A stretch of 64,000 bases of DNA from positions 27,652,001 through 27,716,000 of the forward strand of contig OZ281496.1 of assembly GCA_965637545.1 (NCBI GenBank), written 5' to 3'. Position numbers and translations under genes: made by a program. Source of the DNA: Phallusia mammillata (lineage: Eukaryota). How positions within the stretch are numbered: position 1 is the stretch's first letter; each line of letters begins with the position of its first letter. Positions 14,014-62,305 of the stretch are shown here, in pieces. The notes under the pieces are model-generated. The model was given only the letters and a program-made list of their open reading frames with translations, was not told where the DNA came from and searched no databases.

Positions 14014-17000
14014 TCACAGAAAACTTGCAACAAGTGGCAAAGCCACAGTTATCCACAAGGCGGCGCTGTTGACACTTGCTGCAGAGGTCGTTGTCGTTGG
14101 CGCAGGAGTTGTGGTCACTAAAATCAAACAAGAAGGATCGACTGTAAATAAGCTGGAAGTTGATTTTTTTTCTGTCATGTAGCATTATTTGAATCTTTAA
14201 CCGAGAGAAAAAATTGCACAGTATCGATCACTTCATAGAAGTAATGAAACAAACCGGAAAACTTGGTAAGAAACAAGAAAAGTGCTAATTACAAAACGAT
14301 GTAATTGTAGGCTAATGCTGCAATGTAGGATATAATTTGTAGCCAAATGTGACATTGTTTGTAAGCCCAAAGTTTTCTTCATGCAAAAGTTATTCGTGTC
14401 AAATTGCCAGCTTTCAAATTGCCCTTCGTGTATGCAAATCACACCACACTCAAGTTATAAAACCTTCATACTTCGCGGGCTACTGTGTGTAATGATGCCC
14501 GCACAAGCAAATGCAGCTGATGCATTTTCGAATCACCAAAAATCGAAACATTCTTCTTACCACAGGAAGATCCCGTATCTGTTTGTCCAGCCGGGCAGCC
14601 GCAATTGAAGCTTCCAGGCGTGTTGGTACACGAAAGATGAGATGGTGTGCATGGGTTGTCAGCAGAACACTCGTCAATGTCTGTTAACAAACATTTTGGG
14701 TGCAACATACGTGTTATAAATAGATTGTAAACCAATAGATCTTGTTCGAAATATTACCCTTAGCCTGAGCCTTTTTTGTTTGTTTCTCGTTTATTACGCT
14801 TTAGCCACTGTTTAGTTTTAAATGCTCGTACGTCGTGAAACATGTTTGTTTCAAATTATCACACGAGATTCAGCGTAAAAAGATGATTTCAAAAATATTC
14901 AGATTTTGCTTACCGGAACAAGATTGGCCATTTCCTGTAAAACCCGTGTTACATGTGCATGAAAATGTTCCGGCTTGGTTAGCACAAGCGGCAAAGGTAT
15001 TACATGGAACAGGAGTTTGTGCGCATTCGTCAATATCTGTACATACAAAGATGCTGTTTTAAACCATACGCAAGTTCTATGGTTTTGAACTTAGATAAAA
15101 TCAATCAAACCTTTGAGATCTACGAAGCTACATTCATAAACGTTTATGAACTATGAAAAGGAAATGAAGAGGTTTAAAGACAAATTAGGCGAATGTTGTG
15201 CTGAGGTTTTATCGCTTTGACAAAAGAAAACATTGCAAAACACGTACCGAGTCGGTAATAGCTCCGCACAGGTTGAAAAGGTATAAAGTTAACAAAAAAA
15301 GTGGATGATACATCTGGTAGACTAGAGTTCGTGAGTTAAAAATATCAAGTTTGTGTGTAAAAAAACCTTCATAACAAATAAGCTTGGACACCTGTGCAAG
15401 TGAATCCATCCCCTGTATACCCCGATTGACAAATACATTGGAAAGATCCCGCAGTATTATTGCAGCTTGCCTGGACGTGGCAAGTCGTTGTAGCGCATTC
15501 ATCAATATCTGCAATGGTCACATGTGATAAAATATTAGTAACGATTCTCTTGTAAAAACCTGGTGTATGCCGCAGTAGAATACTATCTGGAACACTATAG
15601 CTATTAACGCTGTAGCATCCTGATCTCTACATGTTGTTTTTGTCATTGCTTTTTATGTTTTAAGGCAATTCTGACAATTTCTAAATAGGCTACGTTAACA
15701 TTGTGTCCACAGTCGTTGCGGATTATGATTTAGGATTATCTTGATCTCATTTAACAAGTTTGTGACATTAGTATAAATCCATCCTTTAGCCAAACGTTTT
15801 CTGCACTGGTAAATGTGTGGGCGGCCAGTCAAGGTTTGAACTCACAAACCAACGAACACACCACGTCGTAATTGTAATCGGCCAGTCAAGGTTTGAACTC
15901 ACAAACCAACGAACACACCACGTCGTAAATAATTGTAATAGCGCAATGCTGTTACAAAATACACTAGATCATATTACAAACACAAAATTAAACCCGCCTG
16001 GACAGTTAGTTCCTGTGGGTATCAAGTTATGTGGAGGGTAGGCCGTCGTACTAGAGGTTACATTGAAGCCTGCGTTGCACACGCATTGCGCAAGAGAGGC
16101 GGCTGGACTTGTACAAGCTGCGTTGGTGCCACATGGATTGAAAACCGTGTTGCAGGGGTTCGGAACTGGCAAAACAAAACATTTGAAAATATAAACGGCA
16201 ATTGAAGACAAACAAGTAATTATAATTGCGAATGATCAATTTTGTGACTATGGATATTATAACTACGGAACTATTAGGGCGGTTATAGATACGGTAATGC
16301 TAATACATATGTACAAATGTAAATACTTTCGTTTATACGATTTAGACTACATCACCTTGCTAGTCCCAAAAACTTAAGATTAAAAGTATGTTTGCTGTGA
16401 AATTGTCACAACAGCGAAACGCCATCCCACCCAATGTACCCTTCGCACTTAATTATCTCCAAAGTTATTGTTGGACGTAACATTATACTACCTTACGGTT
16501 ATTTGAGACATGAGAAGCTTGGGCCAACACAATAAGACCGTGACCTCTACATGCTGTCGGTTAATGGGCGATAATGAAACAAAACGTGTATTACATCATC
16601 TCATTATTACAACACCACTTCATACCTAGAGGTCATATGTCAAAAAATCCCCGAAATGCAGACAACTTTCCCTTAATGTCGTCATTTTCAACAGTATGGC
16701 GAAACCAAGTTAGAAAAAGAGATAGAATACACAATATTTTTTACCTCAGTCGCAGAGGTATTAGGACTAGACATATACTTGGTGATGTGGTCGCACCGTT
16801 TGGGTGCAGAAATCCTTTGTAAACGTTAATTTGCTAAAATAAAAAATTCGAGCACTCCAATACGTATTTGTCCACCTGTCGGTATCAATCTACTTGTGAC
16901 GCTACAGACAGCTGCTAAGTAAATACAGAGGACCAACGACAAAGCCACCACAAAAGAGCCACCACCAAAAGAGATAATGCCAGCAACAAGCGTCTATGTT

Positions 17001-17924
17001 TTGCACAAAAGGGTGAGGGCCTTTAAAACGTGTCATAATGGCGCAATCAGGAAGTGGCTTGCTATTGACAATGTGGTTCCTGTTTTGCGAAGAATTTTGA
17101 CTTGCAACAGCCAACTCAATTGTATTTAAGACTAACAATCTATGATTAGCACGTTTGACGAGTATTTGAGCCATATAAACGGCAGTTTGAAGCCTCAAAG
17201 TCGTATAAAACAGGGTTCTAATTTGGCTTTGATTGGTGTAATTATCTTTTTTTCTTATTAGTTTTGATTGTACCAAAATTGTTCACTACTAGGCCTAACA
17301 TGAAAAAAAAACTATTTTGAATTGCCACATAAGGTGTTAACTGTCAATCAAAATCAAACAGCAGCATAAACTTACTCGTTTGGGCAGAATTTCCACATGA
17401 AGTTAGGCTCAGCAAGGCGTCGTCGGCCACTGAACGGTTTTGATAGGCAAGTGTGCTTGTCATCAATACTGCTGGAGTATCCGTGCTTCCAGGAATATCA
17501 TGAGTTACGTTGTATACGACTAACACTAGAATAAAAACAAACGACCAACAGTAGCACATTTAAAGTTTCCAACCTACTGTTTGTACAATAGCAACAAACA
17601 AATTGGTACCAAAATTGACCTATTTCGACTTCAAATTGACTTTTAAAACAGTAAAAAAATATAAAAAAGACCAGCAAAAGAAGGTCGTGTAACCGACTCA
17701 AACACATTTACAAAAACAATCTAACTTGTCTTTCATACAACAAGTATGTAAGAGGTAGTATGTAAACAACAAAGTGTATCAGTCTCACAAAGTGCGCTTG
17801 TGGTTAAAAGACAAAGTGTTAAGGAAATGTTAAACATACCAGCATTCGCATCGTTTGCATTTGAAGGTTGTAAAGTTGTAAAGCAGAACACAATCACAAT
17901 TGCAAGGTACGTCACCACCTTCAT
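14014..17924 (-). CDS. Paralog E: secreted/GPI-type protein, signal peptide + head module + 4 EGF-like domains + Thr-rich stalk + hydrophobic tail (~288 aa)
   Basis: Exons 17840-17924 ([28 protein letters not shown]), 17376-17525, 15998-16165 (GC donor), 15392-15508, 14914-15036, 14561-14680, 14014-14117 ([34 protein letters not shown]). All junctions phase 1; total 867 nt. DIDEC...C-x-C cbEGF motifs. Confidence 0.85.
15822..15928. repeat. 57-bp tandem duplication in an E intron
   Basis: CGGCCAGTCAAGGTTTGAACTCACAAACCAACGAACACACCACGTCGTAA at 15822 and 15879. Confidence 0.92.
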
Positions 17925-28100: not shown

Positions 28101-30713
28101 ATATCCATCACCAACATAGCCTGTGTTACAGGAACAGCTGAATGATCCAGGTGGTACGTTCGTACATGTGGCACTTGTACTGCAGTTGTGACTTGCATCA
28201 GTACATTCGTTAATATCTTAAAATGTTTGGAAAAGATTAAACAGGTTTCAACGTAAAAATGTATCCACGACAGCAACATGTATTTGTTTTACACGATTTT
28301 TGGCATGCTTCAATTGCACAGTTGAGTCAACAATGTGGTATTATTGGTACGTCAAACGAAACGTATTTCAGAAGACTCCCTCATATTATAAATCAAATTT
28401 GCGTATCGTATTACAGTTCCTTACCTGAGCACGTAACACCGTCTCCACTATAGCCACTGTTGCATGCGCAAGAAAATGTGCCGGCTAAGTTGGTGCAAAC
28501 ACCATTGGTTGAACAATCGTTTGTTCCCTCAGAACACTCGTCAATGTCTAAAGTAAAATCAGCCAGTAATTCTTAACCTGTTTTTTCCTCAAAATATTTG
28601 CTTTTCAAATGTTTAAATGCCTATTGAAAATATATGTATCTACAAAACGACCACATTTTGTTCTGATTGGTTACCTAAAACACGCTATTTAACAATAAAA
28701 CAATATATTGAACAAATCTATGTATGCGCGTAGAAATGGAACCTTACCTGTACATGTTATTGGGGTTGCAGCTTCGTTAATCACAAAACCGCTGTTGCAA
28801 ATACAAGTGTACGAGCCATCGGTGTTCTGGCAAGCGCCATTTCCGCCACAGTCATATCCAAAATCTCTGCACTCGTCAAGTTCTGAAAATAAAGCAATTC
28901 ACATTTAACAAAAAAATAATACTGATAACTGTCGCTATACTTTATCAATGTTACGGTGCTGTCATTGTGCTTTAAAATAAACTCTTTTATGAGGTTTCGT
29001 TTCTGTGCGTGCTGTATAGGTAGTCCTGTATAGGTGGATTATGCCTATTGCTGTTTAAGGGAGTAATATGATGATGTGTCATTTTACCTTCGCAGTGCGT
29101 TCCATTTCCAGTGTTTCCAGTGGTGCAGTCGCAAATGTAACTCCCAGCTGTGTTAGTGCATTCAGCTAAGGTGTGGCAGGTGTTCAAGCTTGGGTCAGCG
29201 CACTCATTTATATCTGACAAAAAGCAAGTAAAATCAGTTTGTAGACATTGGCTTCATTGCTACTACGCTATATGCCACCTAAAGCTTAAGTCATTAGGAT
29301 TTTACGTTTTACGCGTTTTTAAATGCTTGCAGGAGTGAATGCAGCTGCTGGAGTGTATTTCATACATACTCGTTTTTTCAAGTCACCAGTTCAGTCTATG
29401 CTTGACTGTATTTTCTTACCTGTACAAATTTTGTCCGCTGACAGTTCGTAGCCCCGTGTGCAAGTGCATGTGTAAGATCCGGGAGAGTTCGTGCAAACGT
29501 CAGTCTGGTCCCCGCATACCGTGGAGTTTGTGCATTCATCAATGTCTGTAAAATAAAAAAGTGCAGTTATTACAAGGGTTTATGGTCATGAAAAAGTGAA
29601 ATTGGTGCATTGTTTATCAGAATATGGGATCAACTGGTAAACATTTACCCAAATTCCACCCTGGAATTCGACTCGATAGGAATTTTATTGAAGTGTAATA
29701 AAGAATAAAAGAAAACTAGTTGCAAATCAGAAATAATAATTCTCACAGAAATCAAATGAAAAATTCTTACCAGGACAATTCGTTCCATCTGGAATCAATA
29801 CATGTTCTGGTCTGTACGTTTGCGTACTGGCTGTTTGGTTAAATCCGGCCAAGCATTTGCATTGTACCAACGACTCTCCGAGGTCTGTGCAGTCAGCGTT
29901 GTCATGACAGGGATGGAAATTGGTCAGACAAACATCAGCAACTGTAAAATATGACAAAAACGTATGTTTGTGCAAATTTACCATAAAACAACTACTCCTT
30001 TGGTTCTAATAGTTTCCAAATGGAATTTGACATTCCATGTGCAAAACATTAAACAATCATCCAAGGAAATGTCCTAGATTCACTAACGTTCAGACAAATG
30101 GCAAACTTTTTTCACATAGTTTACCCTTGACTATAGTCAAGCGAAAAACCTGAACTGCGCGTAATTACAATTATTCAACAAATAACAGATTTGAATATCT
30201 CAACAACTTACAAAACATTTGTATGTTTGACTTAAACTTACTTCCGATTTGATTTGCAACATCAATAGCACGGTTTCGTGCTGTGATTGCTACTGTGAGA
30301 TTGAAGTAAACATTGTATTCAACGGCAGAAACGAACTCCAGGGCTGTGCCATTGCCTTCCTCTGGAGGCACTGTAGCTGTAACGTTGTAAACAACGAAAA
30401 CTGCAACGACAAAAACTTTTGTAAACGCAGCCAATGTTGAGTTTCACAACGGACACCAATACTAAACGCAGTGTTTAACAAGTCAAAAAATCCGCAACAT
30501 ATCACTTGACGTTTAGTCAAAAGACTGCTTTTTCATGAAATTTTGAGGAAATGCTTTTGTCGTTTGCGTCAATAGAAATCTTATACACGACTCCTATACA
30601 AAAGCACTACTAAGTCCTGTAAACTCCTTACCAGCGTTTGGATCCACGCCAAGGCCATAATCGAACAAGATCACAAGGCCAACGATAATTTGACTTATTA
30701 ACTTCAATAACAT
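19186..30713 (-). CDS. Paralog D: signal peptide + head module + 21 EGF-like (mostly cbEGF) domains + hydrophobic tail (~988 aa)
   Basis: 23 phase-1 exons: 30632-30713 ([27 protein letters not shown]), 30242-30400, 29771-29941, 29420-29545, 29088-29213, 28748-28882, 28425-28547, 28091-28216, 27701-27826, 27508-27630, 26972-27097, 26764-26886, 26349-26471, 25881-26003, 25207-25332, 24704-24823, 24321-24446, 23719-23862, 23201-23326, 20738-20860, 20290-20409, 19789-19911, 19186-19352 (...[22 protein letters not shown]). Sum 2967 nt, divisible by 3. Confidence 0.88.
20503..20600 (+). mobile_element. 5'-truncated copy of the tRNA-derived repeat
   Basis: CTGTCGTGGGTACGAATCCCACCACAGGC followed by CATATGG...GAATGCTTG...GACCG, which also follows the 18566-18638 copy. 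Confidence 0.6.
21420..21600 (+). mobile_element. Possible Penelope-like element remnant with hammerhead-like core
   Basis: CTGATGA-T-GGCA-tgagcatt-TGCC-GAA-ACGT-T at 21509-21540, followed by AATAAA. Confidence 0.5.
22460..22880. mobile_element. hAT-type MITE in a D intron
   Basis: TIRs CAGTGGTTCCCAAAC / GTTTGGGAACCGCTG; perfect TSD ATTTAGCC. Confidence 0.9.
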
Positions 30714-40455: not shown

Positions 40456-41949
40456 GCTTAGATCACGGAACGTAAAATTGTTTCATAACAAAGGTGGATT
40501 GTTGCCTTACCAACACATGTCAATGGGTCTACGGTTCCTTTCACTTTGTAACCGGCGTCACAGTTACAAGTATAAGAACCGACTTTGTCGACGCAAGTCC
40601 CGTGTGGGCTGCAATTGTATCCAAAATCCACGCATTCTTCAAAATCTGTACAATTGATTTGTATTTTTTTAACAAGCAATTTTAAAAAATGTTTCTTAAT
40701 TTCCAGTTACTCTGAACAAACCAAGTTCTTTGTTTCAAAGCACGCGTTTTAGCCTTACCTGCACATGTTACTCCATCACCAGTAAAGCCAGAATTGCACA
40801 TGCAAGTAAAAAAACCCTCCAGTGTTTTCGCAACTGGCATTGGCGTGGCAGTTGTTTAAAGTAGCGTCTGTACATTCGTCAATGTCTTCTACAAGTAACA
40901 AAATAGTTGCCATTTTCTTTTCGACAATTCCACAATTATTAGTGTAAGTGCTTTACCGACCTTCGCAAACCTTTGTCACGGTGAGTTCGTATCCTGTCCT
41001 ACAAATGCAAGTGAAAGATCCAATAGTGTTTGTGCAGAAAGCAGTTTGCGGCCCGCATACCGAAAAGTTTCCAGCGCACTCATCAATATCTGTAAAATAA
41101 GAATAAGCGTTTAAATCGCTTTGTAATGTTTCAAGTTTTTAGAATGCAATAAAAAGGATAATTAGTTATTTGAATGTCCAATCGAATTTCTTTTGTGTAG
41201 AAATAAACGTCACAATTTGTGTATTAATATGTTAACGTTATACTGTGTTGTTTTCTGCATAAAAAACATAACATCTGCTATTTTCTTACCCAAGCATGTT
41301 GTTTCTGGTGGCACGCATCGTTGCCGCAAGGGTGGAGTGTCGTAGAGCAAATGTCCGTCACTGCAATAATATTAAATTATTGTACCGGGCCTTTTTCGCG
41401 CTATAAAACTGGTTGAAAAATGAATACAAAGCATTTTATAACTTTAACCTACATAAGGTTTTATATACCCAACCGCTCTTGTACAAAATAATTAGAAATA
41501 TGAACAACAAACATGCTTACCCGCATTGGTGTCAATCTGAGCTGAGATGCAGCTAATCAAGGCCGCGCAGAACAAGGCAAGAAAAATCATAGACTCCATA
41601 ACCTTTTGTGCTTTTAAAACTCGGTAGCCTTGGCGAAAAAATAAATAATGCTTTAACTATTTTAACATAAACCTGACTGCAATAAGGTTTTATACCACAT
41701 ATAAATGTGATGTCAGTTGTTCACATTTTCTGCTGAACCTGGTCTAAATAAGACAGCACCTCGTTTGACCAAATTTGATACATACTCCCGAGTTTTTATT
41801 TACATGGGCGCATTATTTTAACAGTTGCTTTCCTCTTGCTTTGGTATTCCTTCACATTATCCTAATTGTCAAAAACCCGTCCACTACTTTTTTTGCTAGT
41901 GTTGTCTACAAACAACACTATACCTTTGTACACCGTCGCCGTTAAAGTT

Positions 41950-42170: not shown

Positions 42171-43223
42171 TCTTAACAAGGTTAACTTTATAACATATTG
42201 AATAGATTGTTGAGACAAATTAAAGCTCCTGTGTTCTGGGGAAAAAATCGGAGCGATTGTATTTTATAAGTCAACATACATATTAAAATGAATAAGGTCG
42301 GTTAGGTATTAATTCGTCAGTATTCGCGTTCGCTGTAGATTGAAGTGACATTGACGTTGGGGGAATTACGGGGTTATGTAAATTTATGAGTACAATTCCC
42401 ATCTGACGATGTTTTTTTAATAACACCAAAAACAGATCTAATAGTTAATTGTGGCTTCGTGATCTAAACATTTAAACGTGTGCAATACGATGTATTGTAT
42501 GCATGCGAACTCTCTGTCAGTTATGTTTCAGACAAAGCAATAGTCTCATTTTTATTTGGTACTCAATATTTATCAAAATTACCACTCATTCTCTCAATCA
42601 TTATATATTGGAAACTTGCGCATCAAACAATTTCATGGAGTTGATTTTACGAGTAACATGATACAAAAATTCACACAAATATGCACAACAAGTGTTGTAT
42701 GCCTTTTCCAAGCCCAATTGACAACGATAACGGGAGTTTTAAAGTCGATTAACATGCGAAAGATGTTTTTAAAACAGCTTTAGACAATAAGGATTATTTA
42801 TGTGAAAACAAAAGTTTGCATGTGCATGATGCGGTCCTAATACCAGGGCAAGTCATTGAAGGATGAAGCCTGGATGCCGTAGTAGAAAAGCTTGTGGTAG
42901 TCACCGAAATTGTTGACATAGCTGTGTTGGTATCTAAAATTGTTCAAGGCAAAATTTGAGGTATGCAGTGACAAAAAAAGCTGTTGTGAGCTAAAATGTT
43001 AGATCAATGTGAACAAAGTATGAAGGTTGTTTGACAGTAAATTGCTTTTTACAAAGATAAATAAACATGTTTTTTGTTTTGTTTACCTGCTGTTGTCTAG
43101 AAGGGCCTTTTGATGCTTTGTGTGTCTTCACGAAGTGGTAATGGATGTGGTTTGTTTGTGAAATAGCGAAGTTTTTTCCGAGTTGTTGTTGGGTTTCTTG
43201 CTTCTTGGTGTTTCGTATTGTTA

Positions 43224-49200: not shown

Positions 49201-52200
49201 CGTTCGCTGAGTGTGAGGTGTTATTGAATGCAAGTAGTGCGATGATTTCACTTGTTGTCCCCATTGTCACACGTTCAACGGTGGCGACAAGAGTTTGGTA
49301 AAACAGGGAGGTGTCGTTCACAATGTCGGCAATGAAATCTTCCAACTAAAAGCAAAAGCATTTTTTATCCCCTTTTCACCATTTGCCTTTGCGATGTTGA
49401 TCGTTACGCTTTTTGGTCCATTTCCGAATTTTGAGAAATTTTACAAAGTGCTTATAGATGTAAACTAATACAAAGTTTTAATAAACAGTGTCTTTTTGGT
49501 GATTTGAAAAAAAATGAGATTTTTTTTATATAGCCACCCCTTGGATCATGTTTGCGCCCCTGAAGCTTACGCTTCCCTGCATGATAATTGGTGTAATGAA
49601 GGGATCGTTTTGTCGAGTTATCACAATTGTGGTTTTATTGCAATTATTCATGCACAAATATACTTGAAATGCGACACTTACCGCATTTTTAATGACGACG
49701 TTAGATGAAGTCACAGCTGTTGCAACAAAGAAAACTGAGCGATATTCATACTTCAGTCGCCGGGCTAAAAACAAAGGGTATTTGTGTCATATCACTGCAT
49801 GCTTAATGTTTCGTTCTTTTGTGTAGTTTTTCTTTAACAGGAATAAACAGCAGTCTAAACTGTTCTATAACCAAGTGGTTTTATCTGCAATAAACACTAA
49901 CCATGACAAAACGTGCCGTTTCCGACAAAACCGTTGGTACAAGAACACTCGAAGCTTCCAGGGTTGTTGGTGCATGTTGCATTGCCATGACAACCACTTA
50001 TTCCAGCGCATTCGTTAATATCTGTTAAAGTGGAAGTATGGGGAAGTAGGGTGTTCAGTGCCCCAATAAATGCTTAATGAATCATTTTATCTCTAACATT
50101 TGATTGAGGCGGTCCTAAAGCAATGTCTTTGCGTCAGTTTTAATGTTTTTTTGCTTACCCGTGCAAGTCAAGCCATTGCCCGTGTAGCCAGTGTTGCAAG
50201 CGCATGTGAAACCCCCAGGTGTGTTGTTGCACATTGCATTCGTATCACAAGAGTGAGCTCCAGTCATGCATTCATCGATGTCTGAGTAATATACAAATCG
50301 TTACTTAGACTTCAGAAAAAAAGGAAAATATTTTACAGTAAAGTCTTATCATAGCTTTGTCAACTTTATTACCGAATGGAATGAAAGGGGCGACAGAAGC
50401 CAAATCGCACAACTTTACTGTTAAAGCAACAATCCTTGTTAAGCAACAAATACTTCTGTAGCTTAACCGTAACATGTCTGAAACTGAATTTCGCGACATA
50501 TTCTACATTTTTTTTATCATACAGCACATAAGGCCACCTTTGGAACTACCTGTGCATGTCACACCGGCCCCAGTAAATCCCACATTACAAGTGCAAGTAA
50601 AATCTCCTTGGGTGTCTGTGCAAGTGGCGTTGACGTGACAGTTGTTTAAGGTACTGTTTCCGCATTCGTTAATATCTGAATGAAAAGCACAAGGTTGGCA
50701 AAAATACTTCGGTCAACTGCTTATATCAAACTTACTTGTGCAAATTTTTGCTGAGTTAAGTTGGTAACCAGTAGTGCAGTTACATGTGTAAGATCCAATT
50801 TCGTTAAAGCATGATTCGGTTTGAGGTCCGCATACTGTTGTGTTTCCATCGCATTCGTCGATGTCTGAAAACAAAAGAGTTTTTTTATTGTTGTAATTTC
50901 TCTACTTGAATCAATGTCTGTTGTTTGGAGCTTGAAACAAACGACGCGTATAGTTGAACGGACGACTTAGGCTTGTTGTGAGTGAAAATATATATATCTA
51001 AATAAGTCTCTGCTACAAAGAACTGTTTTTCACACTGGTAAACAGAAATAATAAGATGAGTTTCATATATGTTTATATTTGGATGCAATTGTATTTTGTC
51101 CTGTTGCTGTTTGTTAAATTGGGACTAATAGTTGTAGGAAGGTACATTCAGCTTTGTGTGTTCATGAATCGCTTTTAGAGCGTTTTGCTGTTGCGTCACC
51201 GATAAATGCTATTTTTGCGCTTCCCCATGTAAGTAAGAGGAAACTGGCTATATGTCTGTAGTTCAAATTAAGTCTGACAACTGGTAAATGCTTCACGCAT
51301 GTCGTATGTTATGCTATTAATTCTACCGCAAATCGTTCCGTTTTCTCCTTCGGGCGACAAGTCTATTGCTGGGTCTTGGCACGTGCAGAAAAAGGAACCG
51401 TTTGTGTTGTTGCAAGATGCTAACGACGAGCAGTTTCCATGATTGACTAAACATTCGTCAATATCTAAAGAATAAAACAACAACAAAATATCATGCAATG
51501 CATGCGCTGGGATTCAAACCTTGGCCTTGTATTTGCTCGCATTTTATTTTTAAAGAAAACTCAAACGAGAATGTAGATTCAAATTATTACCTTATGCCTT
51601 TTTAAGAATTAATTAGTTGTAGTTGTATTGTATTTTTAGTTGTTTACCTTCACAAGTAAACGGGTCCACTGTCGTGGTTTGTTTGTAACCTTCGTCACAT
51701 ATACATGTATATGTTCCCAAGCTATTAACACAAGTTCCGTTTGGCCCACAGTTGTATCCAAATTCCACACACTCGTTAAGATCTAAAATAAATGTCGTGA
51801 AATCTGTTTTGATATCAATGGGAAGTGTCACAATAAATGCTTGATGAACCATTTTATCTCTCACATTTAATTGAGGCGGTCCTAAAGCAACGTCTTTGCG
51901 TCAGTTCTAATGTTTTTGTTTTGCTTACCTGTGCAAGTCATGCCATTACCGGTGTAGCCAGTGTTGCAAGCGCATGTGAAACTCTCAGGTGTGTTGGTGC
52001 ACATTGCGTTCGTATCACAAGAGTGAACTCCAGTCATGCATTCATCAGTGTCTGAATAATTTACAAATCGATGCTTAGATTACAGACAAACCTTAAAAGT
52101 ATTTTAGAGTAAAATCTTCATAGCTTTGATTTTTTAAACTTTATTACCATCTTGAAAAGAATAGATTAAAAAGAAATAAAACAAGTGGCTTATCGATGCC

Positions 52201-54096
52201 GCTTGTTAACCAAACATGTATGATCTACTTACCAACACATGTCAATGGGTCCATGGTTCCGTTCACTTGGTAACCGGTGTCACAAGTACAAGTGTAAGAA
52301 CCGACGTTGTCGACGCAAGTTCCGTTTGGGCCACAATCGTAGCCGAAATCTGTGCACTCATTAAAATCTGTAGAATTGTTTTGCGTTAATTCAAAGTTTG
52401 AATCAACACATTTGATTTTTAAAATAGTTTTACTGAAACCAATTAAACCGAAACGCACAAAAAGTTTGCAACCGAATTTAATATGCGCTTTTTACATGAA
52501 ATAATAGAAACAGATAAAAAAGAAAGAAACTAACAACAAACGCATAGCGGTATAAGTTGTTTAAAGAATACGTACAATTATTTTACCAGTTTTGTCAAAA
52601 GAAGAATATGATATGTATGTGATGCCCTGGTGTACAAACGGTTATGTTTGATGAACACCACTTTGTTGCTTATTTAAACGTTTTTCCGGTGTTTGAAACG
52701 TTGTTTGGTTTATGAAATTCTAGGTAATGGCCTATCTTGATTCGTTTCTACGTTTCAGTAGTTCCAAATCTGTGGCATTTAAGTTTTCTTTCCTTCTTTT
52801 CCCGCTGGCCCTTTGTTCAACAATGGCAAAGCAAACTACTGTTGTTGATTTTTAGCCTTACTTCCACATGACAATCCATCCCCAGTGAATCCAACATCGC
52901 AAGCACAAGTGAAAGATGGGTCGGTGTTAGTACAAGTAGCATTGGCGTGACAGTTGTTCAATGTTGCGTTGGCGCATTCGTTAATGTCTACAATGACAAA
53001 AGCCATCAGTTCATGAATTGTGTAAACAAAAGTGGCAAACGCCCTACTTACCAACGCAAACCTTAGCTGAATCAAGTTCGTAACCCGAGTAACAGGTGCA
53101 TGTGTAAGTTCCAGGAGAGTTGGTGCATGAAGCAGTTTGCGGGCCGCATACTGTAGCGTTTCTAACGCATTCGTCAATATCTGGAAAATATTATCAAGAG
53201 AAATACGCGTAACAATTAATTCATGAAATGTTTCTCGTACCCGTGCATGTTGTTCCTGATGGCACGAGTGCAGTGGTAAACGTGGTTGTGCTCATGTCGT
53301 CAAAACCAGAATTACATGTGCATTGTACCATTGAGGTATCAAAATTGGTGCATGTGGAGTCGTTGGCGCAAGGGTGGAGTGTCGTAGAGCAAACGTCGGT
53401 CACTGTAATAATTTCGTTTTGGATTATTATACGGGCTCAAACAGTAGTAAAAGGCGACATGCTAAATGATTTATATAACTAAGTCATTGCTCCTATCACA
53501 TTCTTCCTTAGCACGAGATGACTGCACAATATCTTGCAATTTTTATTGAATATAGGTTCAGAGTGAAAAATGTTTTGATTTCACTTAAGCAAAAAAAGAT
53601 ACTTACAGTTTTTGGCGTTACCACCAGCCAGTATGGCGCCCAGCGCATTCATGGCGATTGTAGAGTTTACGTAGGTTACAGTTTCAACAGTTTCGGTCGT
53701 AATGTTTCCTCCGAGACCATCCGATACGCTTCGTGTGAGATTGTACACAACGATAACTGTAAAAAATAATTGCGATGAAGTGAAGTGGATTCAACAAAAG
53801 CACAGCATTTCGGTTGTTGTATTTTAAACGATAGTCTTTTGCAGATTCTGATCCGAATCGATTGGAACGTTCAGTTTTAGATCGCAAACATTTGCGCTTC
53901 AAAACTAGTTAATATATAACAAAGCATTTTATAACTCAAACTTACTTCAGGTGTTATTTACATAAAACTGCATTCGCATGTAGCAATTAGGAAAAAATAC
54001 AAAAACATGCTTACCCGCATTTGTGTCAATTGTCTGAGCTGAGACGCAGCTAATCAAGGTCGCAGCGAATAAGGCGAGAAAAATCGTTGACTTCAT
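43224..54096 (-). CDS. Paralog B: signal peptide + head + 24 EGF-like + 2 SEA-like + ZP-N-like; last exons uncertain
   Basis: Exons 54015-54096 ([27 protein letters not shown]), 53607-53756, 53241-53402, 53052-53180, 52862-52987, 52233-52367, 51929-52051, 51648-51782, 51327-51464, 50736-50864, 50550-50675, 50159-50281, 49902-50021, 49682-49764, 49129-49345, 48844-48981, 48520-48648, 48335-48460, 48001-48135, 47581-47703, 47297-47419, 47042-47161, 46695-46777, 46327-46543, 45951-46091, 45535-45710, 44869-45136, 44631-44765, 44293-44421, 44089-44214, 43593-43715; frame continuous. Candidate last exon 43224-43330 is tentative. Confidence 0.85.
44990..45710 (-). other. ZP-N-like domain in B
   Basis: [58 protein letters not shown]|[36 protein letters not shown]: four Cys with ZP-N-like spacing, ~100 aa; assigned by eye. 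Confidence 0.6.
46327..46777 (-). other. SEA-like domain 2 in B
   Basis: 83-nt + 217-nt exon pair ([17 protein letters not shown]...[41 protein letters not shown]). Confidence 0.6.
47852..47911. repeat. 30-bp perfect tandem duplication in a B intron
   Basis: TTAAATGTTATTGCATTTTTGTCCAGGTTA x2. Confidence 0.95.
48288..50870 (-). repeat. Internal duplication in B: 48288-48655 matches 50510-50870
   Basis: Two EGF exons, their 59-60-nt intron and the flanks are nearly identical. Also 50080-50340 matches 51835-52110. Confidence 0.9.
49129..49764 (-). other. SEA-like domain 1 in B
   Basis: 83-nt + 217-nt exon pair homologous to A ([16 protein letters not shown]...[41 protein letters not shown]). 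Confidence 0.6.
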
Positions 54097-55819: not shown

Positions 55820-58800
55820 TTAAAAAACGTTCGTCAAAATACTGATAAATCCTAGCGCTAAAGTTAATTGGATTCTTCCCAACAAAAGTAGTCTCGTTGC
55901 GGTGTTGCTACTTTCTGTGGTTGTTGCAATCGTAGATGTGATAGTAGTGGTTGATAGAGTAGGAGTAATTGTTGCACTTGTGCCTAAAAAACCCGTTGTT
56001 GACCTGCTGCCACTTCTTTTGTGTGACAATAAACACTGACGGTTCTATAACCCACAGATATTTAAGATCTTTTTAGACCTAAAAAGTCTACAAGAAATGT
56101 GGATCCTTCATTTTGAAGCGCTGTTTTGATAAGCATTGTTGTTTAAAATCCATGTTAAATTAAAGAAACGGTATTGAAATGACATAACAAAGGCTTGTGG
56201 GACATTCAGTGCAACGCCTTCTTTTGTTGAAACATAACTATGGTTTTGTTTGTGTTACTTTGCGTGTGGTAAAGTGAGGCATTTTCGCAAAATATTTACC
56301 TTCACAAAACGTCCCATTTCCACTGAATCCAGCCATACATGTGCAACTAAAACTTCCTTCGCTATTCATGCAATCTGCGTTCTGATGGCACGTTCCGTCT
56401 AACGCACATTCATTGTTGTCTGAGAAAAAGTGTGATTTTAAAGTAAAGAGAGGATTGACTTTGAGCACGAAATATATTGTATTCAACGCGTTACTTATTT
56501 GTATAATTTGCAAATTTAATCAATGAGACAATGTCAACGCCAAATGTCATTGATTTCAATTGAATGGTTTAGTAGTTTATCAGTCCCAATAGCAACGATT
56601 TATTGTATTTGATCAAATTGCTTAAGGGTTGGTGTTCTTACCGGTACAGGTTTTTGGGTCAACGGCTTCGTTTACTTGAAAACCGGTGTCACAGGTGCAA
56701 GTATATGAACCGACGTTATCAAGACAAACTCCGTTCGGACCACAATCGTATCCGAATTCGACGCATTCATTAAAATCTGTAAACGTGATACATGTTGCTT
56801 TGATTCGCAATTACGCCTTCAATGGGTCTGGCGTATTATGACTTATCGATGAGTATGCCGTAATCGCTGGTCTGCATGGAATGGTGACAGCAGTATTGGA
56901 TGTATTCATTTTAGTTGTTGGTTTGGATTTACAATTTGCAATATAATGAGTGCAAAAAATGATCAGTGTCGAAAGTAACCTGGTTATATGACAGTCGTCT
57001 TATTTTCACCTGTACAAGTGACACCATCGCCAGTGTATCCAGTGTTACAGGAGCATATAAAGCTTCCATTTGTGTTGGTGCACATTGCTGATGCTGAGCA
57101 GTTGCCGTAATTATTGGTACACTCCGAAAAATCTGCACATAAAGCGAGAGTAATGGAGCGATATTTTGCATAAAGTGTAAAAAGTGAACAATGTCGAAAG
57201 TAACCTGGGGATGTGGCCTTCGTTTTTAGTTATTTTTGTTTATTTTCATCTGTGTTCTAAATCGAAAATAAGGCGATAGTAATAGAGCGAATGATTATTT
57301 GCCCACATTTTGATTTAGTACTGGACTTTTTGCTCAGTTACAAAGTTCGCACCATCACCAGTAAGCGATCCACCGTCAATCATTATAGCTGATCCTGTAT
57401 GATCCCTGAGAAGTGCGGTAAATTCGTCCGCAGTGTGGGAAGTTTGATTGAAAGCAAGTAGTACGATGATTTCACTCGGTGTGCCGCTGGTTACACGTTC
57501 AACAGTGGCGATTACAGTGTGGTAAAAGAGGGAGTTGGCGTTCATAATTTCGTCCATAAAATCTTCTATCTAGTTATACAAAAAGTCGTTTCTTCAAGTC
57601 AGTTTCATTGATTTCAGATTTAAACTGTTGCTAACTTTGTTCTAAATTTTCGACATTTACATTTTTTGCACTAAAGCAGTGTTTTTTTAACCTATTTTGG
57701 GCTCGTACTTGAGCTTTCATAAAATTTTCTCGTACCCCTTGTCTACAATTGTCGACGGAAGTAAATAAAATTATAATAATAGGAATTAAACTCAGTGTAT
57801 TTATAACTTGGGTGTTAGAAGCATACATGAAAACAGTGTTGAAAGTAGTACAAAAATAACCCGTTCTAGTAATATAACAAAGTGACTTGTTACGCATTCT
57901 TTACAAATATGTCTAAATACCATATAACTTCATGTCGTGCCCCCTGCTTTAATGCTTTGTACCCCCGAGGGGTACACATAACGTTTTATTCGGCCTATCT
58001 GTTTTGACTTGGTACCGTTTAGTTGGCAGCATGATGAATTTTCTTCTTGAGCAATTGTCATGCACCACTTACCGCATTCTCAATAACGGCACTTGATGAT
58101 GTTACTGCAGTTGAAACTGAGATCACGGCGCGGTAGTCATATTCCAGTCGCACAGCTAAAATATAACAAATTCAAATAGGCTTTTTCATGACATTGCTTT
58201 ATATTCCAAGGTGTGTCGTATTTGCTGGTCTGCATGGACGCTTTAGAACAGTGGTTTTTAACCTATGGTACGCCGCAGCTTCTCGGGTGGTACGCGCGAA
58301 GCTTTCTATTAAACTTAATTAAGTCAGTTGTGAAATTGTAGCTTCACTGACCCAACTGATCAGTGTTTGGACATTCTTCTGAAATTGCTAACATTGCTAA
58401 CTTTGCTGGTTTCATAAATATGCTAGTCTGGTCCTGAAAAAATAGGCCTCTTGGTCCGAATCATTGGTTTAGGTGGTACACCGGGACAAAAAAAGTCGGC
58501 AGGTAGTAGGCCTCAGGTTAAGGACCCCTGCTTTGAAACAAATCCATACTTGTACCTTATCTAAGATCCCATTCCGTGCTAGTTTTATACATGCCAATCA
58601 TGTGACAGTTGACGAAACAACGGTTGTTGCTGTGTAACCAGAGTGACAGTTCCAGATGCCTTTCTGACATGTTCAAGCCAGAGTTGATAGTCGGGCCGGA
58701 CTTTTCTGGCCGGATTCGGGCCGGTTTCGGGCTTAGGTTTTTTCAAACAAAACGGGCTTGATTCGGGCCTGACTTTACACTCGGTGTCAATATTTAAAAA

Positions 58801-61800
58801 AATGTACTGTTTTTAACTGGTTAATGGCCTGTTGCTGGACACCTAAAGTCAAACAGCCCTCAAAAGCCTTGTTCGAGACCAATTGTCTATTGTGTTAGTT
58901 GTCTTGGTCTTTTCGGCCTGTCAATCAAACTTTCTGGCCTTGTCAATCAAACAAAAAACGATTCGGGTTCGTCCTTGGTTTCGGGCTTGCATTGTCGGGT
59001 TCGGGTGGGGTACGGCCTCCAATTTCAGGCCCGTTTGGAACTCCGGTTCAAACCACTAGCCACAATGTACAGGTGTAAAGTCCCCATTGTTTTCATTGGA
59101 CTGTTGCGTTACCACAATCATGTTTTTGAAAAGCACTGACCCTCGCAAGAGATGCCGTTTCCGGTAAAACCATTGTCACACGAACAATCGAAGCTTCCAG
59201 GGTTGTTGGTGCATGTTGCGTTGGCATGACAACCGTGTGCTCCAGCGCATTCGTCAATATCTGTGAAACAACGAGTGACGTTGTGGATTTAACATGGTTT
59301 TGTCGAAGTATCGTATCAATATTAAAGATAGATCCATGGTTGAAGCTCAATGTTGTTGGCTGGCCGACAAACAACATAGCCTATGTCAGGGATTCACATC
59401 CTTGGTACATAATTTTGTCAAAAGCAAATAAAAACATTAGACTATGGACCGCAGACATATGTGTCATTAGTTGATGCGGACGCATTGGTCTGCTAAGCAA
59501 CTCGGCGGGCCGCGCAACCTTTGTTGAATCGCGTTAAACCCGCGGGCAATAAGTTGTACACCTTTGGCCTACGCCATATGCTATCAAAACGGTTGGTACA
59601 ATCTCGGTTCTGCCGGCCATTCTTAAACTCTTTTTTGTGATAAGAATAGCTAAATTTTGACTTAAGAAAGCTGTTACTTGGTACATTATGTTGTTGAATT
59701 ACAATATATTTCTAACATTTTTTGTTTCAAGACGGCATTTCTAACAGTCTAAGCAAGTCACAATGTTATAGACCGTACACGGCTACAAAACAAAACATAA
59801 AATAAACCATTGTGGCTACAACTGGTGTTTTCGTGTTTTTGTGTGATTTCATGTTTTCCCCAATCGCTTAATTTGTTTATAGATGACCGAACCGCGCCAT
59901 ACGTCAAGTGCCGGTTTTTAATTCTTTAAGTTTTTGTTTCAATTTGCACATTCGTTGATTATATTCGATATATACCATTGCATAAAAATATACAAGTTGC
60001 TTGTGGCTTTTTTTGTAACGACGCACTTTTGCCACCTATAGTTAAAAAGATTTTACCTGTGCAAGTCATTCCATCCCCCGAGTAGCCAGTGTAGCAGGCG
60101 CATGTGAAACCCCCAAGTGTGTTGGTGCAAATTGCGTTCGTATCACAAGTGTGAGCTCCAGTTATGCATTCATCGAAGTCTGAATAATTAGAAAACTTGT
60201 GGTTGATAGGTAACAATCGTACTACACTGCATTAAATATCGAAAGACAGAGCGTTTATCTGCACGCTTTCCTTTGAATCGTGAAAAAATTTTTTGTTAAC
60301 AAATCAAAACTGGATTGTGCGTTTATCTAAAAACGTTTATCTACTTACCAACACATGTCAATGGGTCCATGGTTCCGTTAACTTGGTAACCCGCGTTACA
60401 GGTACAGGTGTAAGAGCCAATGTTGTCGACGCAAGTGCCATTTGGACCACAATCGTATCCGAAATCTACGCACTCGTTAATATCTGAAAAAGTGGTTTAA
60501 AGAATTCGTCAGACAATTGTTTTTTGCGCATTTGGTGGTTTGTTGAGATGTGCTTGTAGGCTAGCTATATATCTCAACGTTGGGTCTTCTTTTTTACGTT
60601 ATTATTTATAAATATTGTCTAGTTAAATATGATTGCAAGAAATATTACATAAAAAAAATTGTGAAGTAACATTGTAAGAAAGTGGCATTTGTCTTCATCA
60701 GCCGATGTAACATCTTGCTGTAAAATTGATACTTTACCTGCACAATTTACTCCATCACCAGTAAAACCTGCATCACAAGCGCAAGTAAAAGATGGGTCGG
60801 TGTTGGTGCAAGTAGCATTGACGTGACAGTTGTTCAATGTGGCGTTGGCGCATTCGTTAATATCTGAAACGACAAAAGCCAACAGTTCATATTTTGATGC
60901 TTCATGCAAACAAAAGGGCAATGCAAAACTTACCAGCGCAAACCTTAGCTGAATTAAGTTCGTAATCCGTATTGCAGGTACATGTGTAGGTTCCAGGAGA
61001 GTTGGTGCACGAAGCAGTTTGCGGGCCGCATACTGTAGTGTTTCCCGCACATTCGTCAATATCTGAAAAATATCATTGAGCGGTTTTAGGCTTAAAAAGG
61101 TAACAGAAGTATTTTACTACAGTATTTAAATTTCCTGTGGAATTTGTTTTTTTTTAGTAGGAATATGCGTATTTGTTTAATTTTTTCGTGTTTGTTTAAG
61201 GTTGTTATAATAAGGCCTATACTGGTTATTAAAATCCTTTGGTATATTTTTTTATACGCCGTCGTTTTCTTCATAAAAAAATCGCATCTATCTTACCCGT
61301 GCATGTTGTTCCCGATGGCACGAGTGTAGTGGTAAACGTGGATGTGCTCGAATCGCTGAAACCAGGGTCACATGTGCATTGTACCATCGAGGTATCAAGA
61401 TTGGTGCATGTGGCGTCGTTGGCGCAAGGGTGGAATGTCGTAGAGCAAACGTCGGTCACTGTAATATATTCGTCTTTGATTTATATATAGGCTTAAACAG
61501 TAGTAAAAGGTTGCATGCTAAATTATTTACAAACTAGTTTCATTGGAGTAAAAAAGGTACTTACAGTTTGTGGAATCTCCACGAGCCAGAAGGGCTTGTA
61601 GGGCATTTGTGGCGATTGAGAAGTTTGTGTAGGCGACAGTTCTAACCTCTTTGGTTATAATGAAGCCTCCAAGACCATCCGGTGTGCTTAGTGTGTGGTT
61701 GTACACAACGATAACTTCAAATAATTATTAAAAAAAATAAGTGAAGGTAAACCAACAAAACGCACAGCGTTTTATTTATTTATCTGTTCTTGTCGTTGTA

Positions 61801-62305
61801 TAAACCAGTGGTTCTCAAACTTTTTTTTTTTTTGCGACACCTCTGGAAAAGTTTCTTTGACTTGCGACGCACCAGCAAACAAAAGTTAATGAGGAAACTT
61901 ATTATTAAAGTTGTGTTGATTGATACAGCAACAAAAAGCCACGAAACGAAACTATTCTGCGACGCCCTTGTAAAATTGTAACGACGCACCAGGGCTTCGC
62001 GATGCACAGTTTGAGAACTAACTGCTATAAATGATAGTCGCTCACAGATCTATTAATTGGAACGTTTAGTTTTTGGATGAACGCTGACGAACATTCGCGC
62101 TACAAAACTAGTTGGAATATAAATACAAAAATCAGTGTTTCATAAATTAACTCTACAGTAGGTTTTGTTCATATATCGCCGCTCTTTTACATAACAATTA
62201 GGAATATGAACAACAAACATGCCTACCCGCATTCGTTTCAATCTGAGCTGAGACGCAGCTTATCAAGGCCGCACCGAACAAGGCGATGAAAATCATAGAC
62301 TTCAT
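55820..62305 (-). CDS. Paralog A: signal peptide + head + 9 EGF-like + SEA-like + Thr-rich stalk + hydrophobic tail (~621 aa)
   Basis: Exons 62227-62305 ([26 protein letters not shown]), 61565-61714, 61297-61458, 60934-61062, 60738-60863, 60349-60483, 60057-60179, 59141-59260, 58073-58155, 57353-57569, 57010-57132, 56642-56776, 56300-56419, 55820-55983 ([54 protein letters not shown]). Sum 1866 nt, divisible by 3. Confidence 0.88.
57353..58155 (-). other. SEA-like domain in A (two exons, phase 1-0-1)
   Basis: [28 protein letters not shown]|[72 protein letters not shown]. Alternating strand/helix pattern of ~100 aa fits SEA; assigned by eye. Confidence 0.6.
57677..57990. mobile_element. Truncated hAT-type MITE
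   Basis: Left end CAGTGTTTTTTTAACCT and GTACCCC...GGGGTAC subterminal palindrome; right TIR not found. Confidence 0.5.
58249..58530. mobile_element. hAT-type MITE in an A intron
   Basis: CAGTGGTTTTTAACCT / AGGTTAAGGACCCCTG; TSD CTTTAGAA versus CTTTGAAA (6/8). Confidence 0.7.
58679..59045. mobile_element. MITE with CGGGC(C/T)-rich subterminal repeats
   Basis: Ends CAGAGTTG...GGGCC / GGCCCG...GAACTCCG; TSD GTTCAAGC versus GTTCAAAC (7/8). A related fragment (GAATCAAGCCCGTTTT) lies at ~24575-24640. Confidence 0.7.
61806..62024. mobile_element. hAT-type MITE in intron 1 of A
   Basis: CAGTGGTTCTCAAACT / AGTTTGAGAACTAACTG; TSD GTATAAAC versus CTATAAAT (6/8). Confidence 0.75.

What the first reader, a model, noticed from the sequence alone, without database searches (positions are those of the whole stretch)
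53607..53756. Unrecognised ~50-aa N-terminal head exon that diverges faster than its neighbour
Seen: directly after the signal peptide, A (61565-61714), B, D (30242-30400) and E (17376-17525) carry a Cys-poor module with consensus V(I/F/L)VVYN-x-T...Y-x-N...A..A...L..G. It is followed by an unusual EGF with a ~20-aa C5-C6 loop. Hand count for A versus B: 30/50 aa identical in the head exon versus 45/54 in the next exon; the head has 20 changed codons versus 7 synonymous changes. I do not recognise it as a known domain. Inference: a membrane-distal, diversifying ligand-binding tip.
Basis: partly seen in the sequence, partly recalled or inferred. Interest (0 to 1): 0.72.

Follow-up and report, generated by a model that had tools for sequence, protein, structure and literature searches.

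The report
Orphan sugar-coated cap on EGF rods
Four neighbouring sea-squirt genes for long EGF-repeat surface proteins each start with a small, real, cysteine-poor 50-residue piece that matches no known domain and changes about four times faster than the EGF repeats, but nothing yet shows it is being driven to diversify or that it binds anything.

Summary
The stated coordinates are exact phase 1-1 exons with canonical splice sites in genes A, B, D and E. All four lie directly after the signal-peptide exon and before a non-calcium EGF with a 22-25-residue C5-C6 loop.

The four heads are homologous (0 of 500 shuffles reach any pair's score). They share VVYNxT and YxNx(S/T), two N-glycosylation sequons, plus two Ala.

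No known domain was found:
- Pfam, PDB sequences, Foldseek, VIA-align and the ESM Atlas gave nothing.
- A profile search of 1.84 billion proteins gave only repeat-protein artefacts.

AlphaFold2 gives a modest hairpin-plus-helix model (pLDDT 68).

For A versus B, head dN is 0.32 against 0.085 for the next three EGF exons, at similar dS. Head omega is 0.79 (95% CI 0.35-1.77), so it fits relaxed constraint and positive selection is not shown. Head omega does not differ from that of the neighbouring long-loop EGF (0.67).

Gene F has lost the head exon and crippled that EGF, so the two behave as one dispensable unit.

No RNA evidence was obtained here. The scan already reported the same kind of head in the adjacent window (s1-403114). 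"Ligand-binding diversifying tip" remains a guess. The joined head+EGF model was not folded.

The parts
53607..53756 (-). Gene B head exon (the finding): 150 nt, phase 1-1. It encodes [51 protein letters not shown] and carries three N-x-S/T sequons.
   Evidence: AF2 model
54015..54096 (-). Gene B signal-peptide exon ([27 protein letters not shown] plus the first base of the Val codon).
53241..53402 (-). Gene B EGF1 exon: a non-calcium EGF with 22 residues between C5 and C6, Ser/Thr-rich.
   Evidence: EGF_3 25.7 bits; EGF_Mua-3 21 bits, below threshold
61565..61714 (-). Gene A head exon, 59% identical to B.
61297..61458 (-). Gene A long-loop EGF1 exon.
   Evidence: EGF_3 29.2 bits against a 28.5 cut-off
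62227..62305 (-). Gene A signal-peptide exon.
30242..30400 (-). Gene D head exon (159 nt), the most divergent copy. It keeps VVYNxT and YxNxT.
29771..29941 (-). Gene D long-loop EGF1 exon (25-residue C5-C6 loop).
17376..17525 (-). Gene E head exon.
15998..16165 (-). Gene E long-loop EGF1 exon (24-residue loop). The donor reads GC rather than GT, so the 3' boundary is less certain.
41281..41599 (-). Gene F 5' end. The signal exon (41521-41599) is intact. The head exon is removed by a deletion of about 450 nt. The EGF1 exon is cut to 71 nt by a 91-nt internal deletion that breaks the frame unless the exon is skipped.
55823..56044 (-). Gene A last coding exon: a Ser/Thr-rich stalk, then a hydrophobic tail and a stop (GPI-signal-like).

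Best explanation
The head is a lineage-restricted N-terminal cap of a tandem family of sea-squirt calcium-binding-EGF rod glycoproteins. It has not been classified before. It is about 51 residues long and probably folds as a beta-hairpin plus one amphipathic helix. Two N-glycans are held at fixed positions (VVYN-x-T at the start of strand 1, Y-x-N-x-S/T at the hairpin-helix junction). It works as a two-exon unit with the following non-calcium EGF, whose long Ser/Thr-rich C5-C6 loop is found only at that position. The unit sits at the far end of a rod that in at least two genes ends in a GPI-signal-like tail. A small core is under purifying selection: the hydrophobic first strand, the two sequons and the small residues on one helix face. 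The remaining, presumably exposed, positions drift at about the neutral rate. The result is a glycan-bearing tip that differs between paralogs and between haplotypes. Shown here: exon structure, homology, invariant sequons, rate pattern, and absence of detectable relatives. Inferred: the fold, glycosylation, packing against EGF1, the anchor, and any binding role.
For: - Four in-frame, canonically spliced exons lie at the same rank in four paralogs.
- They are homologous beyond chance, and the invariant columns are dominated by two sequons.
- The five AF2 models score pLDDT 59-68, with strands at 2-11 and 19-28 and a helix at 31-43.
- The helix segment shows periodicity of hydrophobicity (permutation p = 0.03) and of conservation (p = 0.05). 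The head is 41-52% hydrophobic, unlike a Ser/Thr/Pro linker.
- Head dN is 0.317 (CI 0.19-0.48) against 0.085 (0.05-0.125) for the next three EGF exons. dS is similar (0.40 vs 0.30). Omega is 0.79 against 0.28. For the head against cbEGF2+3, Fisher p = 0.03.
- The long-loop EGF occurs only directly after a head, 4 of 4 times among 66 EGF exons.
- Gene F lost the head and crippled EGF1 together.
- A and E have GPI-like tails.
- In run X2 about 42% of the depth at B's head exon carries N17S plus T19I, which removes the middle sequon.
- No known family matched.
Against: - The fold model is only moderately confident and rests on four sequences. The strands show no alternating pattern.
- The head's nucleotide identity between A and B (0.73) is the same as that of the flanking introns (0.70-0.74). 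Most of the exon could therefore be unconstrained filler.
- No RNA run held the locus, and all contigs laid on it were genomic. Splicing and expression of these four genes were not shown here.
- Glycosylation, GPI anchoring and head-EGF1 packing are all inferred.
- The rate estimate rests on one paralog pair and 49 codons.
Confidence: 0.5

Rival explanations
1. The head is a largely unconstrained spacer. The exon is kept only because it holds the reading frame, a hydrophobic stretch and two glycosylation sequons that help secretion or shield the N-terminus. The rest is neutral filler with no binding role.
For: Omega is 0.79, or 1.04 without the invariant columns. Exon identity equals intron identity. 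In contigs from other runs the head exon differs from the reference by 6.4% (8 of 125 nt), within the 5-7% seen for mainly intronic pieces (table 8). Gene F does without the head. No homologue was found outside this cluster.
Against: The frame, length (150-159 nt) and splice sites are preserved in copies that share only 31-44% of residues. The head is 41-52% hydrophobic and its helix segment shows amphipathic and conservation periodicity. AF2 gives a consistent hairpin-helix. F may simply be a dying gene.
Confidence: 0.28
2. The head is a diversifying recognition determinant. Its surface is under positive or balancing selection for gamete, allo- or pathogen recognition, like the variable regions of ascidian vitelline-coat EGF proteins.
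For: Its dN is the highest in the gene, and omega is about 1 once core sites are removed. A haplotype variant with two replacements removes a sequon and partly matches paralog A. The genes form a tandem multigene family at the cell surface. There is ascidian precedent: HrVC70/HaVC80 EGF repeats vary between individuals (PMC9265791).
Against: The omega CI of 0.35-1.77 includes neutrality, and P(omega>=1) by bootstrap is 0.27. N/S counts do not differ from those of EGF1. There are no expression or tissue data.
Confidence: 0.12
3. The head is an oligomerisation module. Two beta-beta-alpha units pair their hairpins into a four-stranded sheet covered by two helices (a ferredoxin-like half-domain dimer), joining rods at their tips.
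For: The first strand is hydrophobic throughout (I/L/F-V-V-Y) with no alternation, which suggests both faces are covered. The weak structural neighbours are mostly ferredoxin-like or ACT-like halves.
Against: The best Z is 3.6, which is noise level. No dimer was modelled. An N-glycan at N5, next to the hydrophobic stretch of that strand, might hinder strand pairing (my inference).
Confidence: 0.1

Closest known systems
Orphan head exon on EGF rods in the adjacent window of the same genome (scan finding s1-403114)
   Same: The same genome and the same chromosomal neighbourhood (about 5 kb beyond this window). It describes a Cys-free 37-50-residue head directly after the signal peptide of EGF-repeat surface proteins, some with lipid-anchor-like tails, and no known domain.
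   Different: These are different gene copies. I could not read those sequences, so homology of the heads is assumed, not tested. That note reports transcription; I found no RNA evidence for the copies in this window.
Ascidian vitelline-coat EGF-repeat proteins HrVC120/HrVC70, HaVC80 and CiVC57 (review PMC9265791)
   Same: Ascidian secreted or surface proteins built of a signal peptide plus 12-24 EGF-like repeats, one repeat per exon. They vary between individuals and take part in cell-cell (sperm-egg) recognition.
   Different: As described in the review, HrVC120 goes from the signal peptide straight into EGF repeats and ends in a ZP domain. CiVC57 starts with a von Willebrand factor domain and ends in a ZP domain plus a transmembrane segment. 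Neither is described with a Cys-free head or a GPI tail.
EGF domains with extended C5-C6 loops (Pfam PF25478 EGF_Mua-3; PF12947 EGF_3)
   Same: The exon after the head has the six-Cys EGF pattern. It reaches the EGF_3 cut-off in A and D. In A and B the Mua-3 profile covers it end to end, long loop included.
   Different: The Mua-3 match is below threshold (21-23 bits against 27) and is absent or weak in D and E. This concerns the neighbour exon, not the head.
F-G hairpin of bacterial Ig-like repeats (He_PIG/PKD) and plant-type LRR units
   Same: Local motif resemblance: Y-N-[LV]-T-x-x-V-S-D-G to '...GVYNVTVTVSDGTD...', and NLTxSxxDxLG to the LRR consensus. This produced the only profile hits.
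   Different: The hits are sums of 3-15 short partial matches in repeat proteins. The head is a single 49-residue unit, about half the length of an Ig-like domain, and has no Pfam match.

Membership tests
Any Pfam-A family (head exon) | Match to a curated profile at or near the gathering score | tested here: not met
   None of the four heads matched any family at E <= 10.
SEA domain (considered because G/A-[SV]-V-V-V... resembles the post-cleavage strand) | An alpha/beta sandwich of about 110-120 residues containing the G|SVVV strand pair, detectable by profile | tested here: not met
   The head is 49-52 residues with beta-beta-alpha only. There is no Pfam SEA hit. There is no profile-profile similarity to the gene's own internal Cys-free module (hhalign probability 0.1%).
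Ig-like He_PIG / PKD repeat | A seven-strand beta sandwich of about 80-95 residues; Pfam PF05345/PF00801 match | tested here: not met
   Only the hairpin motif resembles it. The He_PIG protein P0006 scores through 7 partial stretches. The head has no Pfam hit.
Leucine-rich repeat | Tandem 20-29-residue LxxLxLxxN units forming a solenoid | tested here: not met
   Eight of the ten profile hits are LRR proteins matched by 3-15 short stretches. The head has one such stretch and no tandem repeat.
EGF domain (neighbouring exon) | Six Cys in the C1-C6 pattern; Pfam EGF/EGF_3 at the gathering score | tested here: met
   The six-Cys pattern is present in all four copies. EGF_3 scores 29.2 and 29.1 bits against a 28.5 cut-off in A and D; B scores 25.7 and E 17.8, both below the cut-off.
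Calcium-binding EGF (neighbouring exon) | N-terminal D/N-x-D/N-E/Q-C consensus | tested here: not met
   EGF1 starts TDVC / ADVC / PNPC, and EGF_CA scores below threshold. The next exons start DIDEC / DINEC.
Ascidian vitelline-coat EGF-ZP proteins (HrVC120 / CiVC57 type) | C-terminal ZP domain after the EGF array; gonad expression | not tested
   The architecture is taken from PMC9265791. The one candidate non-EGF chunk I scanned (45529-45747) gave no Pfam hit. No expression data were obtained.
GPI-anchored surface protein | C-terminal small-residue omega site, short spacer, hydrophobic tail ending at the stop; release by PI-PLC | tested here: inconclusive
   Tails of this form are seen for A (55823-56044) and E (ending near 14017) by sequence inspection only. 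No predictor was run and there is no experiment. B's tail was not identified.

The most novel reading that the evidence does not exclude
The head plus the long-loop EGF is a new composite fold. It forms the polymorphic, glycan-modulated specificity determinant of a tunicate-specific multigene recognition system (gamete or allorecognition). Paralogs and haplotypes would differ mainly at the exposed face and in sequon number.
Probability: 0.1. Interest if true: 0.7.

Novelty: new variant of a known kind. Interest (0 to 1): 0.36.

Why it matters
Long EGF-repeat surface proteins are common, and their specificity usually lies in a terminal non-EGF domain. Here that terminal piece is a small, apparently tunicate-restricted module with no recognisable relatives. 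It has two fixed glycan sites and an otherwise freely changing surface. If it proves to be a binding tip, it would give a handle on what this large tandem family recognises in an animal group known for self/non-self discrimination at fertilisation and fusion. If it is only a glycosylated spacer, the family is an ordinary lineage-specific expansion. On present evidence the second possibility is nearly as likely as the first.

Tried and rejected
1. Profile HMM of the four heads against 1.84 billion representatives gave ten hits with E < 1e-3. All are repeat proteins (8 LRR, 1 TPR, 1 He_PIG) matched by 3-15 short stretches, so I rejected them as artefacts. No self-like hit appeared, so the library's representatives do not carry this head.
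2. A word-index search with the 69-residue stop-free chunk around B's head found no candidate. It only sees proteins of 38-120 aa.
3. ESM Atlas by features: the best score was 0.89, below the useful range.
4. Structure searches with the head model found nothing above noise. Foldseek PDB best E was 1.4. VIA-align wide best Z was 3.6. ESM Atlas by shape gave short generic matches. PDB sequences gave E >= 0.35.
5. I tested the idea that the head is a half copy of the genes' internal 74-residue Cys-free module, or SEA-like. hhalign gave 0.1% probability. The internal module has no Pfam or PDB hit and folds poorly (pLDDT 48), so it could not serve as a bridge.
6. I tested the idea that the head's faster divergence merely reflects a different gene-conversion history. 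EGF1 alone has a low dS (0.14). Pooled over three EGF exons, however, dS (0.30) is close to the head's (0.40), so the excess is mainly in dN.
7. RNA evidence: no listed holder is on record as RNA. The four runs laid were genomic contigs, and some contigs on EGF1 carry paralog-A-like letters. Allelic dN/dS therefore could not be computed.
8. Folding or searching the joined head+EGF1 (spliced) sequence was left out, because a joined model has no reference.

Full report
**What is there.** The window is animal DNA of about 38% GC. Earlier notes of this scan call the genome a sea squirt, Phallusia-like; I did not verify the species. All 66 EGF-type exons lie on the minus strand and belong to tandem paralogous genes.

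The finding's coordinates (53607-53756) and the three other stated copies (61565-61714, 30242-30400, 17376-17525) are exact exons:
- each has a polypyrimidine tract and AG before it and GTAAGT after it;
- the lengths are 150, 150, 159 and 150 nt;
- all are phase 1-1 with no stops.

Each follows a signal-peptide exon ending ...[D/E]-x-N-A plus the first base of a Val codon. The mature junction is N-A-V-[I/F/L]-V-V-Y-N-x-T.

Each head is followed by an EGF exon with 22-25 residues between C5 and C6, which is unusually long (my background knowledge: about 8 residues is usual). That exon reaches Pfam EGF_3's cut-off in A and D. It lacks the calcium-binding consensus that the next exons (DIDEC, DINEC) carry.

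**Is the head a real, homologous module?** Yes.
- A vs B share 29 of 49 residues. E is 36-44% identical to A and B. D is 31-33% identical to the others.
- All six pairwise global alignments beat 500 of 500 shuffles (z 4.3-16.6).
- Nine columns are invariant: V2 V3 Y4 N5 T7 Y28 N30 A34 A37.
- Two of the conserved motifs are N-glycosylation sequons, each preceded by Tyr: YN-x-T and Y-x-N-x-S/T. Extra sequons come and go (B has 3, D has 3, A and E have 2).
- Frame, length and splice sites are preserved at 31-44% identity, which itself shows selection for a translated exon.

**Is it a known domain?** I found none.
- Pfam gave no family at E <= 10 for any head.
- A profile of the four heads against 1.84 billion representative proteins gave ten hits with E < 1e-3. 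All are repeat proteins (eight LRR, one TPR, one He_PIG Ig-like) that score through 3-15 short partial matches. They reflect the local motifs NLTxSxxDxLG and Y-N-V-T-x-x-V-S-D-G, not homology.
- The word-index search, PDB sequences and ESM Atlas features gave nothing.
- A 49-position profile can only see fairly close relatives in so large a library. 'No relatives' therefore means none above roughly half identity among the representatives.

**Fold.** AlphaFold2 on the four-sequence alignment gave pLDDT 67.7, with all five models between 59 and 68. It predicts strands at 2-11 and 19-28 and a helix at 31-43.
- The helix segment shows amphipathic periodicity of hydrophobicity (p = 0.03) and of conservation (p = 0.05). 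The two strands show no alternation.
- The head is 41-52% hydrophobic, unlike the Ser/Thr-rich stalk at the C-terminus.
- Foldseek against the PDB (best E 1.4), VIA-align against 48,161 chains (best Z 3.6) and the Atlas shape search gave only generic hairpin-helix matches.
- A lone beta-beta-alpha unit with a fully hydrophobic first strand is unlikely to stand alone. It probably packs on EGF1's long loop or on a partner.
- I did not fold the joined head+EGF1 sequence, because a spliced model has no reference. This is the main gap.

**Rates, A versus B** (Nei-Gojobori with codon bootstrap).

| Exon(s) | dN | dS | omega (95% CI) |
|---|---|---|---|
| head | 0.317 | 0.401 | 0.79 (0.35-1.77) |
| EGF1 | 0.097 | 0.144 | 0.67 (0.20-2.93) |
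| cbEGF2 | 0.088 | 0.281 | 0.31 (0.10-1.04) |
| cbEGF3 | 0.068 | 0.645 | 0.11 (0.02-0.30) |
| EGF1 + cbEGF2 + cbEGF3 pooled | 0.085 | 0.303 | 0.28 (0.15-0.52) |

- The head changes its protein about four times faster than the EGF exons at a similar silent rate.
- Its N/S ratio differs from that of the two cbEGF exons (Fisher p = 0.03) but not from EGF1's (p = 1).
- Without the nine invariant columns omega is 1.04.
- Nucleotide identity of the head exon (0.73) equals that of the flanking introns (0.70-0.74). The EGF exons are 0.84-0.90 identical.

This is the signature of a small constrained core in an otherwise near-neutral exon. It neither shows nor excludes positive selection.

**Variation within the species.** No run on record as RNA held the locus. 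The four runs I laid are genomic contigs.
- In run X2, which holds 93% of the stretch's sampled words and may be the assembly's own sample, about 42% of the depth at B's head exon carries 53705 T>C plus 53699 G>A and 53698 C>T.
- On the coding strand these changes give N17S and T19I, which together remove the middle NIT sequon. The new Ile codon equals paralog A's.
- A contig from another study (X3) differs from the head exon at 8 of 125 positions. That is within the 5-7% seen for mainly intronic contigs (table 8).
- Some contigs on EGF1 carry paralog-A-like letters, so cross-laying prevents an allelic dN/dS.

**The head and EGF1 as a unit.** The long-loop EGF occurs only directly after a head, 4 of 4 times. 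Gene F keeps a closely similar signal exon. It has lost the head exon through a deletion of about 450 nt spanning the end of intron 1 to most of intron 2. Its EGF1 exon is cut to 71 nt by a 91-nt deletion that breaks the frame unless the exon is skipped. Because all exons are phase 1-1, F could still encode a head-less rod, or it may be decaying.

**Position on the protein.** Gene A's last coding exon and a chunk at the 3' end of gene E are Ser/Thr-rich and end in a hydrophobic tail followed by a stop, which looks like a GPI signal. If so, the head is the membrane-distal tip. This is inference from sequence alone.

**Reading.**
- Most likely (about 0.5): the head is a lineage-restricted, glycan-bearing N-terminal cap that forms one unit with the long-loop EGF, with a conserved core and a freely drifting surface.
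- A mere glycosylated spacer is the main rival (about 0.28).
- Diversifying recognition (about 0.12) and tip-to-tip oligomerisation (about 0.10) remain open.

**Comparison with what is known.**
- The nearest thing is this scan's own earlier finding in the adjacent window (s1-403114): the same kind of Cys-free head on EGF rods, reported there as transcribed. I could not compare sequences.
- In the literature, ascidian vitelline-coat proteins (HrVC120/HrVC70, HaVC80, CiVC57) are EGF-repeat proteins involved in sperm-egg recognition. As reviewed, they begin directly with EGF repeats or a von Willebrand factor domain and end in a ZP domain (PMC9265791). I do not file this family with them.

**Verdict.** 'Unrecognised domain' is supported. 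'Faster than the neighbour' holds for protein change but not for dN/dS. 'Diversifying ligand-binding tip' is unproven.

Noticed in passing
window 41281-41599 (-): Gene F keeps a signal exon closely similar to A's and B's. A deletion of about 450 nt removed its head exon, and a separate 91-nt deletion cut EGF1 to a frame-breaking 71 nt. The gene is either a head-less isoform produced by exon skipping or a decaying copy.
   Followed up: partly
window 46322-46543, 49124-49345, 57348-57569, 35154-35363 (-): A second Cys-free single-exon module of about 74 residues ([14 protein letters not shown]...ERVTxGT...[15 protein letters not shown]...DG) is embedded between EGF exons in genes B (twice), A and the gene at about 35 kb. 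It has no Pfam or PDB sequence hit, AF2 gives pLDDT 48, and it shows no profile similarity to the head.
   Followed up: partly
window 53698, 53699, 53705: Variants carried by about 42% of the depth in run X2 and also seen in run X3 change N17S and T19I in B's head, removing the NIT sequon. The new Ile codon (ATA) matches paralog A, which hints at shared polymorphism or gene conversion.
   Followed up: partly
window 53433-53518: A contig from run X5 replaces this 86-nt stretch of B's intron 2 with 47 other letters. Paralog A has a larger gap at the same place in the A/B alignment, so this looks like an indel polymorphism.
   Followed up: no
window 55823-56044 and a chunk ending near 14017 (-): Ser/Thr-rich stalk followed by a hydrophobic tail and a stop (GPI-signal-like) at the 3' ends of genes A and E. 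A similar Ser/Thr-rich stretch without a clear tail lies at 42797-42943 and 37385-37459.
   Followed up: partly
window 51271-51513, 48824-49051, 45937-46152, 34589-34789 (-): A distinct EGF subtype with a 16-residue C5-C6 loop (C-x-C-Q/P-D/T-P/S...G-x-N-G-T-I/V-C) recurs inside the arrays.
   Followed up: no
window 48242-48659 vs 50462-50875; 50057-50373 vs 51824-52148: Gene B has internal segmental duplications (86-87% nucleotide identity including introns), so the EGF rod is growing by recent multi-exon duplication.
   Followed up: no
window 15998-16000 (-): Gene E's long-loop EGF exon appears to end at a GC rather than a GT donor (CCAG|GCGGGT), so its 3' boundary is uncertain.
   Followed up: no
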